Origin: Schmidtea polychroa | Lineage: Eukaryota | Assembly (NCBI GenBank): GCA_044892525.1 | Contig: CM097886.1 | Coordinates: forward strand, 165,342,312-165,406,311 | DNA: 64,000 nucleotides | Direction of reading: 5' to 3' | Part shown: in pieces, positions 1,846-17,480 of the stretch | Position numbering within the stretch: position 1 is the first letter of the stretch | How the letters are laid out: the number at the start of each line of letters is the position of its first letter | The notes under the pieces: model-generated | What the model was told of the DNA's origin: nothing | The model's input: the letters and a program-made list of their open reading frames with translations, nothing else | Databases searched by the model: none | Translations under genes and position numbers: made by a program

Positions 1846-4800
1846 ATGCTTAAATTAGCTGTTTCGCATTATTTGAAGTCTATTGGGGATAAATTTTTTC
1901 ATCCAGTATTGTCATTAATTTTTCAAATTTTTCAATTATTTCTTTCACTTGCAGAATCCAGATTACGTTGAATGGGACAATGTCGATTGCTTGGATGTTG
2001 TTATAAAAAGGCGACCAAAATGGTGTTGGCAAAAAAACACCTACATTTATGATCATTTTGGAATAAATGATTTACTAGATACTCCATTCTCGGTAGATAA
2101 ATCAGATTATTTGAAAAAGCTAGAACCGCTGACCCCTAGTTTCTCCTATTCCAACAAACATACCATTAAGGGTGAATTTGGAGCTAATATTGCATCATTA
2201 TTATCGCTGGATTTGTCCGGCAATGATACAATTACAGTAAACATGGAAATAGATGGGATCATGAAACAATCAATTGATTTCGCTGTCGTCGCAAAAGAGT
2301 TAATGAAAAAGTGAGTAATTTTATTGATACTAATCGAGATCAAGTAAATATGATTTAAGAAAAGTCAACCTGAAGAATAAATATCTAGAGAGACTGGGGA
2401 AATGTAATCTCAATGTAATCTGTCTCGTAACGCAATACATTTATATTACAAAGCCAGCTACAATTAAAGTATCTGTCAACGTTGATTGCACTGGGAACAA
2501 TGATGAGAAACCTAATATAAAAGTATTAAATGCATTTTTTATTAAAAATATAATCATAAAGTTAATGAAATTTAATACTACTCACAAATGATTTCTCAGT
2601 AGATTAGTTCATGTGTAAACGCCAATTATGATAATTAGATGATTATATATTAACCAGATTACAAATTTCGATAATATTTTTTATTAAAATTGATAATCGG
2701 CAAAATATTGATATTCTATCAATGAAGTTTTCAAGAGGGGTCTAAAAGAAAACCTTAACATTTTTTCTTGATAATAATTGCTCTAGACATATTTATTAAT
2801 TCATTATTTAAATCTCTTTATGAATTTCACTAGAATATTTTTGTGTATCGTATATATTCATGGAGAACAATGAAAGGGGGTCAAGTGGGAACGGGGGAGA
2901 TTTTACCGATTTTTCTTTATAATTATCCCTATCAACTTTTCTATTATTTCAATATTTATATTTCTCTATGATTTACATTATAATATTTTTGTGCATCGTA
3001 TATATTCATGGAGAACAGTGAAGGGGGGTCAAGTGGGCCCGGGGGAGATTTTACCGATTTTTCTTTATAATTATCCCTATCAACTTTTCTATTATTTCAA
3101 TATTTATATTTCTCTATGATTTACATTATAATATTTTTGTGCATCGTATATATTCATGGAGAACAGTGAAGGGGGGTCAAGTGGGCCCGGGGGAGATTTT
3201 ACCGATTTTTCTTTATAATTATCCCTATCAACTTTTCTATTATTTCAATATTTATATTTCTCTATGATTTACATTATAATATTTTTGTGCATCGTATATA
3301 TTCATGGAGAACAGTGAAGGGGGGTCAAGTGGGCCCGGGGGAGATTTTACCGATTTTTCTTTATAATTATCCCTATCAACTTTTCTATTATTTCAATATT
3401 TATATTTCTCTATGATTTACATTATAATATTTTTGTGCATCGTATATATTCATGGAGAACAGTGAAGGGGGGTCAAGTGGGCCCGGGGGAGATTTTACCG
3501 ATTTTTCTTTATAATTATCCCTATCAACTTTTCTATTATTTCAATATTTATATTTCTCTATGATTTACATTATAATATTTTTGTGCATCGTATATATTCA
3601 TGGAGAACAGTGAAGGGGGGTCAAGTGGGCCCGGGGGAGATTTTACCGATTTTTCTTTATAATTATCCCTATCAACTTTTCTATTATTTCAATATTTATA
3701 TTTCTCTATGATTTACATTATAATATTTTTGTGCATCGTATATATTCATGGAGAACAGTGAAGGGGGGTCAAGTGGGCCCGGGGGAGATTTTACCGATTT
3801 TTCTTTATAATTATCCCTCTCGACATTTCTATTTCTTCGTGATTCGCGTTAATATATAATTACAAAGCTGAGATCCGTTTGTTTAAAGCAGCAAAAACTC
3901 TCAGTCGATGAGCTCTGGCGTAATTAAATTTACTTTACCTTTTCCATTTGAAGTATCTCAGTCAATGTGACTGTTTAGCTTGTACGTTTGTGTCAAATAT
4001 CATAAAGTTATTATTAATATCATTCATATCTTAAAGTCTTATATCTTATATATTTCATTTGTATTAAATATATTTTTTCACACCAAAAGGCTTAAATTAT
4101 CATTTAATTGTTTATAATATCATTCATATCGATTATACATTGATTTAATGATATTAATTGCATAATTAACCTTTACTATGCAAAATTAGAATAAATTAAT
4201 ATTTTATTTTAATAATTTAGTAATTTACAATTGATAAAATCCCGAAAGGTTTATGATGAAATATTTATTTATCATAGTTTCAAGTCGGCCATTATATAAA
4301 AAAAATTCCACGAAAATAGTAACATTTGTAATTGGAAACACCAGACACCTTTTGATTATCTACACCTATATACTTGGTTTGTAGTACCCAGGGCCCGCTG
4401 TGAGTTTTGCGGGGTCTCAGTAAAATATTATATACGGGCCCCTTCCCAAAAATAAAGAAATGATACATGACCATATTTTTATCAATTTATTTAATGAAAT
4501 ATTTATTTTTTCCATATATTCAATAATATACGTAAACATTTTTTATTCTTATTTCGTACAAACATATTACTGCTAATTCCTCGATAATATCATTAAAATT
4601 TATCAGTTTTATTACCTCCTGCTCTATTGACAACATACCCACTCCATCTAACCTATTCGGCGAAATCTATTGAAACAGGCGTTGTTAGCATAATTCTCAA
4701 TGCTATATATGTATTGGGATATACATCTACTACCTTGATGTCATGATTTGATCAATATTCTGATTCGAGAGATACTCTTTCATTGTTTTAGCTCGGTGTG

Positions 4801-16800: not shown

Positions 16801-17480
16801 ATTGCCCACTGTTTGATATAATATTTGTCATTGATATTTGTCAAATTTGTAAACAGTTAAAATGAAAAATAATAATATTATTATTATTTATATTTATTTA
16901 TTTTAATTTTAAAAATTATTTTTATTTATTTATTATTATCTATAGTTATTTAAAATTCTTATAATTTGTAATTCTATTTTATTTTTATTATTTAATAATA
17001 TTTATTATTTTTAATATGATTATTATTATTAATTATATAAATTTATTATTTTTTTTATTATAATCATATTTTATTATACATTTATATTATTTATAATTAT
17101 TTTTAATATTATTATTTTTTATTTGTTTATTAATTATTTTTATTATTTTTTATTTATTAATTATTAATAATATTTATTATTATGATTATTTTTTATTTTT
17201 ATTGTCTATTATTATTATTTTATTTTATCTTTTATTATTTATTATTTTTATTTCAGTTAGAAAAGGTAATAAATCCAGATTTTCAAGACAAATCATTATT
17301 TGGAAAACTTTATCAAAATGATAATATAAAAAAATTATTTCTGGTGAGCAAAATTAATATAAATTTCGATGCAAAATATAATCTGAATTCTTTTATATTT
17401 AGTCCGTCGGAATACTAGAAAAAGAGCGCCATTTGAATGAATACTTAGTGCCGACCTACATCCTGATACATAATATTTGA
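1846..17480 (+). CDS. GSDME: Gasdermin (GSDME/pejvakin-like pore-forming protein), 9 exons, 462 aa
   Basis: Exons 1846-1905, 1955-2310, 2360-2522, 9878-10109, 14959-15083, 16454-16579, 16627-16788, 17257-17343, 17403-17480. All introns are GT-AG and phase-compatible; 1389 nt total from ATG to TGA. The N-terminus MLKLAVSHYLKSIG...LDVVIKRRPKWCWQKNTY resembles GSDME LSLVTKKKRFWCWQRPKY. KTITFDSGTRLAFDFAECLISPDGTIEL resembles VLEIPAATTIAYGVIELYVKLDGQFEF. C-terminal helices (LKKLESFFVDCL, LLYLFKQVG, IQSVNQLEE, KKLFLSVGI) fall in GSDM-C order. Exons 5-9 are less certain than exons 1-4. Confidence 0.88.
2834..3818. repeat. Tandem array, 148-bp unit, about 6.7 near-identical copies (gasdermin intron 3)
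   Basis: The anchor atcgtatatattcatggag recurs at 2847, 2995, 3143, 3291, 3439, 3587 and 3735, an exact 148-bp period. The first copy is slightly diverged. Confidence 0.97.
4530..5979 (-). mobile_element. Degenerate pogo-like (Tc1/mariner superfamily, DDE_1) transposon
   Basis: Frameshifted segments: N-terminal HTH from ATG 5643 (MAGTRKGYSVKYK), FKASQHWI (CENP-B HTH), IIAMDET, and LLVWDSGSTH (DDE_1). A pogo-type terminus ...tctgagaaatacgg followed by TA lies at 5980-81. The left TIR was not found, and the element spans an N gap. Confidence 0.85.
5732..5902. other. Assembly gap
   Basis: Run of N. Confidence 1.
5982..6260 (-). pseudogene. hAT (Tip100/ZMYM1-like) transposase relic
   Basis: Minus strand reads LVALDERFEKYTRYNDGFGFL...KKYCNGLHLFLQDGENADING, typical of ZMYM1-like hAT transposases. 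A possible terminus cagggcccgc near 4389 suggests the pogo element is nested inside it. Confidence 0.6.
10262..12082 (+). mobile_element. Internally deleted hAT (Charlie/GTF2IRD2-EPM2AIP1-like) transposon in gasdermin intron 4
   Basis: TIRs catgcttgtccaacc / ggttggacacccctg and a perfect 8-bp TSD ctttatat (10254-10261, 12083-12090). ORF 11098-11421 is a BED-type N-terminus (MCLIC...NLKRHYTQKH). ORF 11693-11881 is the C-terminal dimerisation region (FGSTYICEQLFSRMK). The catalytic core is missing. Confidence 0.93.
15558..16044 (+). mobile_element. hAT Charlie/Buster-like (ZBED5/SCAND3-type) fragment in gasdermin intron 5
   Basis: Terminus cagtgtttcccaaac at 15558. ORF 15793-16044 reads WLCKFAYLANIFSVLNCLNLSLQ...KLKLW. 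The segment near 15700-15750 recurs near 43815-43870. Confidence 0.7.
16156..16400. repeat. Foldback/MITE: inverted arms of about 80-93 bp around an AT microsatellite
   Basis: 16156-16248 (tttattaaaaagagc...ttcacgaattttcggcactg...agtgaatt) is the reverse complement, apart from a short indel and a few mismatches, of 16320-16400. Related single arms lie near 515-545 and 7960-8000. Confidence 0.88.
16870..17250. repeat. (ATT/TTA)n-like low-complexity tract (gasdermin intron 7)
   Basis: Imperfect trinucleotide A/T repeat visible directly in the sequence. Confidence 0.9.

What the first reader, a model, noticed from the sequence alone, without database searches (positions are those of the whole stretch)
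1846..17480. Hidden, apparently intact gasdermin gene: a candidate pyroptosis effector in an AT-rich invertebrate, possibly a flatworm
Seen: nine exons splice in phase into a 462-aa ORF, although the ORF track shows only unconnected pieces and misses exons 1, 3, 5, 6, 7 and 9. Established: gasdermins have an N-terminal pore-forming domain and a C-terminal autoinhibitory domain, and caspase-3-activated GSDME-like proteins are described in some invertebrates such as cnidarians. Inference: this is a strongly diverged full two-domain gasdermin. If the host is a triclad, it would imply a lytic cell-death or immune pathway that I do not know to be characterised in that lineage. Automated annotation could easily fragment it because introns 3-5 (7355, 4849 and 1370 nt) are full of transposons.
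Basis: partly seen in the sequence, partly recalled or inferred. Interest (0 to 1): 0.92.

Follow-up and report, generated by a model that had tools for sequence, protein, structure and literature searches.

The report
Intact gasdermin-E-like gene in a planarian-type genome
The nine pieces do splice into a real, intact gene for a gasdermin, the family of proteins that kill cells by punching holes in their membranes. It carries a likely caspase cut site at the position mapped experimentally in amphioxus, so it is a new, strongly diverged member of a known family, not a new kind of system.

Summary
Nine + strand exons (1846-17480) with eight GT-AG introns give a 1389-nt, 462-aa ORF. The N gap (5732-5902) lies inside intron 3 and interrupts no codon.

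The spliced protein aligns end to end (43% identity, no indel at any junction) with P0001, an intronless 469-aa ORF on a metatranscriptome contig that passes Pfam Gasdermin. It scores 158.8 bits against a profile of 18 non-flatworm invertebrate gasdermins, where shuffled copies reach at most 11.6.

The AlphaFold model of P0001, used as a stand-in, matches solved gasdermins first. Support for the C-terminal repressor domain is moderate only.

DVTD255-258|S aligns column for column with VHTD250-253 of amphioxus GSDME, its mapped activating caspase site. The genome holds many caspase loci and a second gasdermin locus 18.4 Mb away.

The gene most likely encodes a caspase-activated pore-former of the GSDME type. 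Expression evidence is indirect, and cleavage and lysis are untested.

No open paper describing a flatworm gasdermin was found. GSDME homologues are already reported as widespread in invertebrates, so I rate it a new member of a known kind, of moderate interest. The scan had noted the cut site on this same window before.

The parts
1846..1905 (+). Exon 1 (aa 1-20, start ATG; helix alpha-1 with the family-invariant K11 and G14)
   Evidence: 70% identical to P0001 residues 1-20. In-frame stop 7 codons upstream.
1955..2310 (+). Exon 2 (aa 21-139, phase-2 end; carries the basic K38-R39-R40..K42 W-x-W motif of the beta1-beta2 loop)
   Evidence: The top three PDB hits by phmmer are Gasdermin-E N-terminal chains (E about 0.09-0.11; a fourth GSDME-containing chain ranks fifth at 0.28), aligned at GSDME residues 29-80. 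21 library hits at E<=0.001; all ten run through Pfam pass Gasdermin, and two others (P0002, P0003) look like chance LRR-type matches.
2360..2522 (+). Exon 3 (aa 139-193; helix alpha-3 region and following strands)
   Evidence: 47% identical to P0001. Matched at genome scale by P0001.
2523..9877 (+). Intron 3 (7355 nt as assembled). It contains the assembly gap 5732-5902, a 148-bp x7 tandem array at 2794-3833 and a pogo-like DDE_1 transposase remnant at 4730-5539 (minus strand).
   Evidence: The gap is purely intronic and no residue is missing at the exon 3/4 junction.
9878..10109 (+). Exon 4 (aa 194-271; last strands of the N-domain with invariant T216, then the interdomain linker)
   Evidence: 43% identical to P0001. 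Hit at E 3.9e-15 by P0001 in the genome search.
10061..10075 (+). D255-V-T-D258|S259, candidate caspase cleavage site in the linker
   Evidence: It aligns column for column with VHTD250-253|A of amphioxus GSDME (P0029), which is the mapped activating site. Most invertebrate homologues have D-x-x-D followed by A, G or S in these columns (PMC10155998).
14959..15083 (+). Exon 5 (aa 271-312; start of the C-terminal domain)
   Evidence: 36% identical to P0001.
16454..16579 (+). Exon 6 (aa 313-354)
   Evidence: 38% identical to P0001. Weak genome-scale hit from the P0001 C-terminal half.
16627..16788 (+). Exon 7 (aa 355-408)
   Evidence: 31% identical to P0001. Weak genome-scale hit.
17257..17343 (+). 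Exon 8 (aa 409-437)
   Evidence: 38% identical to P0001. The spliced continuation, not read-through to the stop at 17418, matches the P0001 C-terminus.
17403..17480 (+). Exon 9 (aa 438-462 plus TGA stop at 17478-17480)
   Evidence: 44% identical to the last 25 residues of P0001.

Best explanation
This is an intact, probably expressed gene for a two-domain gasdermin of the GSDME (gasdermin-E/pejvakin) branch, in a fast-evolving flatworm-type clade.

Likely mechanism: the full-length 462-aa protein is held inactive by its roughly 200-aa helical C-terminal domain. An effector caspase cuts the linker after D258 (DVTD|S). The freed N-terminal fragment (aa 1-258) binds acidic membrane lipids through its basic alpha-1 and beta1-beta2 surfaces, oligomerises, and inserts beta-hairpins to form a large pore that lyses the cell.

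Shown here: the gene structure, membership of the gasdermin family for the N-domain, conservation of the C-terminal half with a relative, the position of the DxxD site, and the presence of caspase genes in the genome.

Inferred: autoinhibition, cleavage at D258, lipid binding, pore formation and any role in immunity or tissue turnover.
For: Gene model: nine in-phase GT-AG exons.

End-to-end alignment: collinear with P0001, an intronless 469-aa ORF on an AT-rich 1842-nt metatranscriptome contig. There is 43% identity and no indel at any junction. P0001 passes Pfam PF04598 at 55.8 bits against a cut-off of 25.

Profile match: the spliced protein scores 158.8 bits (E 1e-44 at Z=1e6) against an HMM of 18 non-flatworm gasdermins; 2000 shuffles reach at most 11.6. 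It scores 92 bits against P0020, whose relatives are named pejvakin-like or Gasdermin-domain proteins in Lingula and Branchiostoma.

Nearest family: exon 2 alone ranks human GSDME first in the PDB. The protein atlas puts P0001 nearest to gasdermin-E clusters at 0.97.

Fold of P0001: the top 33 Foldseek hits are all gasdermins. VIA-align gives Z 18.0 with rmsd 2.6 A to the Trichoplax gasdermin and Z 17.6 to the GSDME pore. Its residues 257-469 match GSDMD-C (Z 11.0) and the poxvirus A47 gasdermin (Z 11.2).

C-terminal half: window versus P0001 scores 95 bits.

Cleavage site: DVTD255-258 aligns with the mapped VHTD250-253 of BbGSDME (PMC10155998).

Functional residues: K11, K38, R39, K42 and T216 are conserved at positions whose mutation abolishes lysis or oligomerisation in BbGSDME (PMC10155998 section 10).

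Activators: at least 24 Peptidase_C14 exon matches at several loci in the genome.

Expression: small assemblies (14-69 M letters, two studies) of the same organism hold 48-64% of the words of two separate exon-plus-short-intron stretches, while the large runs hold 100%. This fits transcript contigs.
Against: Pfam's own Gasdermin model found nothing on single exons or in a six-frame scan of the genome. It could not be run on the spliced protein.

The structure evidence comes from a 43%-identical stand-in, not from the window's own protein, and that model has a mean pLDDT of only 63.6.

The C-terminal domain is not significant against non-flatworm gasdermins by HMM (8.5 bits, inside the shuffle range) or by hhalign (P 0.05). 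The isolated C-domain model matches gasdermin C-domains first, but only at Z 7.5 and 6.2 and Foldseek E 1.2.

P0001 lacks an Asp at the aligned P1 position (it has DIFD two residues upstream), so the site is not strictly conserved within the clade.

Three of the four alpha-3 basic residues tested in BbGSDME are not conserved in register.

The runs that hold the exons are only guessed to be RNA.
Confidence: 0.78

Rival explanations
1. It is a real gasdermin gene but is not a caspase-3-type 'cut at DVTD and lyse' switch. It may be activated by another protease or at another site, or the DVTD cut may be neutral or inactivating. Alternatively it may have a non-lytic, pejvakin-like role, for example in organelle quality control.
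For: The closest relative P0001 has no Asp at the aligned P1 column. Amphioxus GSDME has a second site whose product is inhibitory, and caspase sites are described as lineage-specific (PMC10155998). NCBI names several homologues 'pejvakin-like'. The clade sits on a very long branch of 3.3 substitutions per site. Three of four alpha-3 basic residues are not in register.
Against: The DxxD motif followed by a small residue lies in exactly the columns of the mapped activating site, and most homologues share it. The gene keeps a full-length C-terminal half of about 200 aa, unlike vertebrate pejvakin, which according to PMC10155998 lost the last three exons. The beta1-beta2 basic cluster and the oligomerisation threonine are kept.
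Confidence: 0.17
2. It is a silent or decaying gene copy whose reading frame happens still to be open.
For: No run on record as RNA holds it. No identical or close protein exists in the 15-billion-protein collection. The gene is riddled with transposon remnants in its long introns. For the paralogue, only exons 1-4 could be found.
Against: 462 open codons across nine exons in a 28%-GC genome, all eight splice sites canonical, and every exon conserved with P0001. Exons are richer in GC than introns. Very small assemblies of this organism hold much of two exon stretches, which is hard to explain if they are DNA.
Confidence: 0.04
3. It is an assembly chimera: exons 1-3 and exons 4-9 belong to different copies that were joined across the N gap.
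For: The gap at 5732-5902 lies between exon 3 and exon 4, next to a transposon remnant. Continuity across it was not tested with reads.
Against: Order, strand and phase are exactly those of one gene, and no residue is missing or duplicated at the junction relative to P0001. Only two gasdermin loci exist in the genome, and the other one has its own exons 1-4 with a comparably long intron 3.
Confidence: 0.02

Closest known systems
Amphioxus GSDME (BbGSDME, Branchiostoma belcheri; P0029; PMC10155998)
   Same: Same length class (453 versus 462 aa). Same two-part layout, with an N-domain of about 240 aa, a linker and a C-terminal half of about 200 aa. An Asp-P1 tetrapeptide sits in the same alignment columns (VHTD253 versus DVTD258). 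K11, the beta1-beta2 basic cluster and the beta9 threonine are conserved.
   Different: Only about 20-25% identity. The window's clade lies on a very long separate branch. Three of four tested alpha-3 basic residues are not in register. No second DVVD-type site was looked for or shown. No experiment exists for the planarian-type protein.
Human/vertebrate gasdermin E (GSDME/DFNA5; PDB 9h5m, 9pe0)
   Same: Best PDB sequence hit of exon 2, including the K-K/R-x-x-W-x-W-Q motif. The stand-in model matches the GSDME pore at Z 17.6. Nearest atlas clusters are gasdermin-E. Activation by caspase-3 at a linker DxxD is the model proposed here.
   Different: Sequence similarity is marginal (E about 0.09 for one exon). 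The vertebrate Gasdermin_C Pfam model was not seen on any invertebrate homologue tested. No vertebrate sequence was available for a tree.
Cnidarian gasdermins (coral, Hydra and Exaiptasia GSDME-type; P0021, P0033, P0035)
   Same: Invertebrate two-domain gasdermins with DEPD|G or DQPD|G in the same linker columns. Reported to trigger pyroptosis after caspase cleavage (cited in PMC11251625).
   Different: They form a separate, well-supported clade, with about 19-24% identity.
Pejvakin (PJVK/DFNB59)
   Same: Same GSDME/PJVK branch. Automatic names of several homologues say 'pejvakin-like'.
   Different: According to PMC10155998, vertebrate PJVK arose from gsdme by losing the last three exons, which encode the inhibitory domain. 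The window's gene keeps a full C-terminal half and a linker DxxD site.

Membership tests
Gasdermin family (Pfam PF04598 N-terminal pore-forming domain) | Significant profile match over the N-terminal domain of about 240 aa | tested here: met
   The spliced protein scores 158.8 bits against an HMM of 18 non-flatworm proteins that all carry PF04598; shuffles reach at most 11.6. It scores 92 bits against P0020, which itself scores 125.7 bits on PF04598. Caveat: Pfam's own HMM was run only on single exons and six-frame DNA and found nothing there. It could not be run on the spliced protein.
Gasdermin family | Gasdermin N-domain fold (alpha-1 helix on a twisted beta-sheet with extension regions that become the membrane hairpins) | tested here: met
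   Tested on the 43%-identical stand-in P0001, not on the window's own protein. The top 33 Foldseek PDB hits are all gasdermins. Z 18.0, rmsd 2.6 A, 208 residues aligned to the Trichoplax gasdermin; Z 17.6 to the GSDME pore.
Gasdermin family (two-domain, autoinhibited type) | C-terminal helical repressor domain (Gasdermin_C fold) | tested here: inconclusive
   A conserved C-terminal half of about 200 aa exists (95 bits against P0001). In the full P0001 model it matches GSDMD-C at Z 11.0 and A47 at Z 11.2. The isolated model puts GSDMA3 and GSDMD first among 48,161 chains, but at Z 7.5 and 6.2, with Foldseek E 1.2. There is no significant sequence match to non-flatworm C-domains, and PF17708 was not hit.
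GSDME type (caspase-3-activated gasdermin) | Linker tetrapeptide with Asp at P1 (DxxD) between the two domains | tested here: met
   DVTD255-258|S259 at window 10061-10075 lies in the same alignment columns as the mapped VHTD250-253 of BbGSDME and the DxxD of most homologues.
GSDME type | Actual cleavage by an effector caspase that releases a lytic N-fragment | not testable with these tools
   Only the presence of caspase-family genes in the genome was shown.
Gasdermin family | Basic lipid-binding residues and oligomerisation residues shown to be essential in BbGSDME | tested here: inconclusive
   Conserved: K11, K38, R39, K42 (three of four of the 4KA set), a hydrophobic residue at position 13, and T216. 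Not in register: T49 and three of four of the alpha-3 4RA set, although the segment is lysine-rich (PMC10155998).
GSDME/PJVK clade rather than GSDMA-D | Phylogenetic placement with GSDME/PJVK | not tested
   No vertebrate sequences were retrievable for the tree. Indirect evidence: the best PDB hit is GSDME, the nearest atlas clusters are gasdermin-E, and the literature states that GSDMA-D are restricted to jawed vertebrates (PMC10155998).
Pejvakin (PJVK) | Truncated C-terminus lacking the inhibitory domain and the cleavable linker | tested here: not met
   The window's protein has five C-terminal exons (aa 271-462) and a DxxD linker site.

The most novel reading that the evidence does not exclude
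The fast-evolving, duplicated flatworm gasdermin clade could be the executioner of a lytic cell-death programme in planarians. That programme might be pathogen-triggered pyroptosis, or one of the explosive or turnover-linked cell deaths recently described in these animals, such as 'ruptosis', for which no executioner protein is named in the preprint (PMC11996342). This would link caspase activity during regeneration and tissue remodelling to membrane lysis instead of silent apoptosis.
Probability: 0.08. Interest if true: 0.8.

Novelty: new member of a known kind. Interest (0 to 1): 0.42.

Why it matters
Planarians are a leading model for cell turnover, regeneration and, increasingly, invertebrate immunity. 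Their cell-death literature concerns apoptosis and autophagy. Six full-text searches of 8.4 million open papers and preprints found none describing a flatworm gasdermin.

An intact GSDME-type gene with a caspase-type linker site gives a concrete, RNAi-testable candidate for lytic death downstream of caspases in this lineage. It also adds a very divergent branch for studying how gasdermin autoinhibition and cleavage sites evolve.

It does not change the general picture, because GSDME homologues are already reported from cnidarians to chordates.

Tried and rejected
- **Pfam on single exons** and a six-frame PF04598 scan of the whole genome both came back blank. The exons are too short and too diverged, so this is not evidence against the family.
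- **PDB phmmer** with exons 3 and 4 alone gave no hits.
No splice-junction reads were obtained.
- **The search for homologous proteins** with P0001 found only itself, and with an 11-sequence profile only five proteins. The window's own spliced protein is therefore not in that collection and could not be referenced, so Pfam, AlphaFold and the atlas were run on the stand-in P0001.
- **Adding window exon translations as rows** to the alignment scattered the short fragments, so they were left out.
- **The C-terminal half against non-flatworm gasdermins** was not significant by HMM or hhalign.
- **The search for the paralogue's C-terminal exons** within about 19 kb downstream and genome-wide found nothing.
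- **A metagenome scan** for more members of the clade returned only P0001's own contig.
- **An atlas look-up of the TNFAIP8 neighbour**, tried to get a host taxon, gave no flatworm label.
- **A link to planarian 'ruptoblasts'** was considered. The preprint does not mention gasdermins and says these cells express no known cytotoxic effectors, so it is kept only as a low-probability speculation.
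Full report
**What is there.** The window is AT-rich (21-36% GC in 2-kb bins) and lies at C2:165,342,312-165,406,311 of a 781-Mb assembly with chromosome-scale pieces.

On the + strand, nine exons splice into 1389 nt, i.e. 462 codons plus TGA: 1846-1905, 1955-2310, 2360-2522, 9878-10109, 14959-15083, 16454-16579, 16627-16788, 17257-17343 and 17403-17480. 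All eight introns are GT...AG with polypyrimidine-rich acceptors. An in-frame stop lies just upstream of the ATG. The CDS is 32% GC against 26% for the introns.

**The assembly gap.** The N run at 5732-5902 is inside intron 3, 3.2 kb from the exon 3 donor and 4 kb from the exon 4 acceptor. No frame crosses it, and only the intron length is uncertain. It abuts a pogo-like DDE_1 transposase remnant on the minus strand, which is a plausible reason for the gap. Nothing coding seems to be missing. The exon 3/4 junction aligns without an indel to an intronless relative. The paralogue in the same genome also has an intron of about 8 kb at this position. Continuity across the gap was not tested with reads.

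**Is it a real coding gene?** A phmmer search of 1.84 billion cluster representatives with exon 2 alone gave 21 hits at E<=0.001. The best is P0001 (E 3.7e-34, 50% identity). P0001 is a 469-aa ORF without introns on an AT-rich (33% GC) 1842-nt JGI metatranscriptome contig that has 5' and 3' untranslated flanks.
- The spliced window protein aligns with P0001 from residue 1 to residue 461 at 43% identity.
- There is no indel at any of the eight junctions, and each exon is 31-70% identical.
- The C-terminal half alone (aa 271-462) scores 95 bits against the P0001 C-terminus, while 3000 shuffles reach at most 12.
- The alternative of reading through the exon 8 donor to the stop at 17418 is rejected, because the spliced exon 9 matches the P0001 C-terminus.

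**Is it a gasdermin?** All ten hits tested, including P0001 (55.8 bits), pass Pfam PF04598 'Gasdermin pore forming domain', whose cut-off is 25 bits. Named relatives include pejvakin-like proteins of Lingula and Tubulanus, Gasdermin-domain proteins of Branchiostoma, and coral and anemone proteins.

An HMM built locally from 18 non-flatworm homologues scores the spliced window protein at 158.8 bits (E 1e-44 at Z=1e6). Shuffled copies reach at most 11.6. Exon 2 alone ranks human gasdermin-E chains first in the PDB (E about 0.09), aligned at GSDME residues 29-80 over the K-K/R-x-x-W-x-W-Q motif.

Pfam itself found nothing on single exons or in a six-frame scan of the genome. I read this as fragmentation plus divergence. 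In a maximum-likelihood tree of the N-domains, the window gene, its paralogue and P0001 form a 100/100 clade on a stem of 3.3 substitutions per site.

**Fold (by stand-in).** The spliced protein is not held in any collection, so it could not be passed by reference. I therefore folded P0001 with a 19-sequence alignment (mean pLDDT 63.6; N-domain mostly 70-92).
- Foldseek's top 33 PDB hits are all gasdermins.
- VIA-align gives Z 18.0 with rmsd 2.6 A over 208 residues to the Trichoplax gasdermin crystal structure, and Z 17.6 to the GSDME pore.
- Full-length GSDMD, GSDMA3 and GSDMB align across residues 1-469.
- Residues 257-469 match isolated GSDMD-C (Z 11.0, rmsd 3.6, 167 aligned) and the poxvirus A47 gasdermin (Z 11.2).

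Folded alone, the C-terminal half (pLDDT 69.8) puts GSDMA3 and GSDMD first among 48,161 representative chains. However, the Z-scores are only 7.5 and 6.2, and Foldseek gives E 1.2. By sequence, the C-terminal half is not significant against non-flatworm gasdermins. The two-domain reading is therefore well supported by architecture and ranking, but it is not proven.

**Activation site and functional residues.** In the alignment of 20 full-length proteins, D255-V-T-D258|S259 (window 10061-10075) occupies the columns that hold DEVD|A, DATD|G, DEPD|G and similar motifs in most homologues. It lies exactly over VHTD250-253|A of P0029. P0029 carries VHTD at 250-253 and DVVD at 301-304, the two caspase sites mapped by mutagenesis in amphioxus GSDME. 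There, cleavage at D253 yields the lytic N253 fragment (PMC10155998).

Residues whose mutation abolishes lysis or oligomerisation in that protein map as follows:
- K38, K39 and K42 correspond to K38, R39 and K42 in the window protein.
- K49 corresponds to T49.
- V13 corresponds to I13.
- T212 corresponds to the family-invariant T216.
- Of the alpha-3 set, only one of four is basic in register, although the segment is lysine-rich.

The nearest relative P0001 lacks Asp at the aligned P1 position (it has DIFD two residues upstream), so the exact site may drift within the clade. The genome has at least 24 Peptidase_C14 exon matches at several loci, including a tandem cluster at C4:50.59-50.64 Mb, so candidate activating caspases exist.

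**Expression.** Indirect evidence remains. Runs X1-X4 (two studies; assemblies of only 14-69 million letters; labelled 'RNA?' as a guess) hold 48% of the sampled words of exon 6-intron 6-exon 7 and 58-64% of exon 1 to exon 3. Larger runs of the same organism hold 100%. A DNA assembly covering about 2% of a 781-Mb genome would rarely hold both stretches, so these are probably transcript contigs. This does not prove splicing.

**Context.** There are two gasdermin-like loci in the genome, both on C2 and 18.4 Mb apart. For the second (about C2:146,957,311-146,966,192), exons 1-4 are open and about 52% identical in exon 2, but no C-terminal exons were found.

My data are consistent with a planarian but do not test it.

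**Novelty.** Six full-text searches found no open paper on a flatworm gasdermin, and the amphioxus survey's supplements list no flatworm. [quoted passage not shown] This is therefore a new, very divergent member of a known kind. It is a good experimental lead in a regeneration model, not a new type of system.

Noticed in passing
G000:C2:146957311-146966192 (L004:2311 to L005:1192): A second gasdermin-like locus lies 18.4 Mb upstream on the same chromosome-scale piece. Exons 1-4 are open, exon 2 is 52% identical, and intron 3 is also about 8 kb. No C-terminal exons were found within about 19 kb or genome-wide, and its exon 4 seems to end before the linker. It may be an N-domain-only gasdermin or simply too diverged to detect.
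   Followed up: partly
window 2794-3833: A 148-bp tandem repeat of 7.0 copies at 98% identity sits inside intron 3. Each copy carries a spurious 42-aa GTG ORF, which explains the row of identical ORFs in the ORF list.
   Followed up: partly
window 4730-5539 (-): Pogo-like transposase remnant (Pfam DDE_1, 32.6 bits) directly left of the assembly gap at 5732-5902.
   Followed up: partly
window 11098-11881 (+) and 36267-37922 (-): Remnants with a Spin-doc zinc finger (zf-C2H2_12), plus DUF4371 in the second copy. They look like hAT or ZBED-type transposase fragments. One lies in intron 4 of the gasdermin gene. The ORF at 15793-16044 in intron 5 looks similar by eye but had no Pfam hit.
   Followed up: partly
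window 56980-57591 (+): An intronless 203-aa ORF with a full TNFAIP8 domain (143 bits), a family linked to cell-death and immune regulation in vertebrates. It lies about 40 kb downstream of the gasdermin gene.
   Followed up: partly
window 22740-23177 (+): An exon-like ORF matching peptide methionine sulfoxide reductase (PMSR, 95.6 bits, N-terminal half of the domain).
   Followed up: no
window 20190-21014 (-), 39371-40156 (-), 28274-29719 (-): An ISXO2-like DDE transposase ORF, a Tc5/pogo HTH ORF, and a 481-aa ORF with no Pfam match.
   Followed up: no
window 24797-24957: A second assembly gap, outside the finding.
   Followed up: no
G000:C4:50590547-50642177: A tandem cluster of caspase-family (Peptidase_C14) exon matches. 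Further caspase loci lie on C1 and C2, including a 361-aa open frame at C2:73922365.
   Followed up: no
window 1955-2308 (exon 2 residues 47-98): Two very long repetitive library proteins (P0002 of 1567 aa and P0003 of 5333 aa) and a Leptospira LRR protein in the PDB hit the S-L-L-S-L-D-L-S-G-N-D stretch many times. This looks like a chance resemblance to the leucine-rich-repeat consensus, not homology.
   Followed up: no
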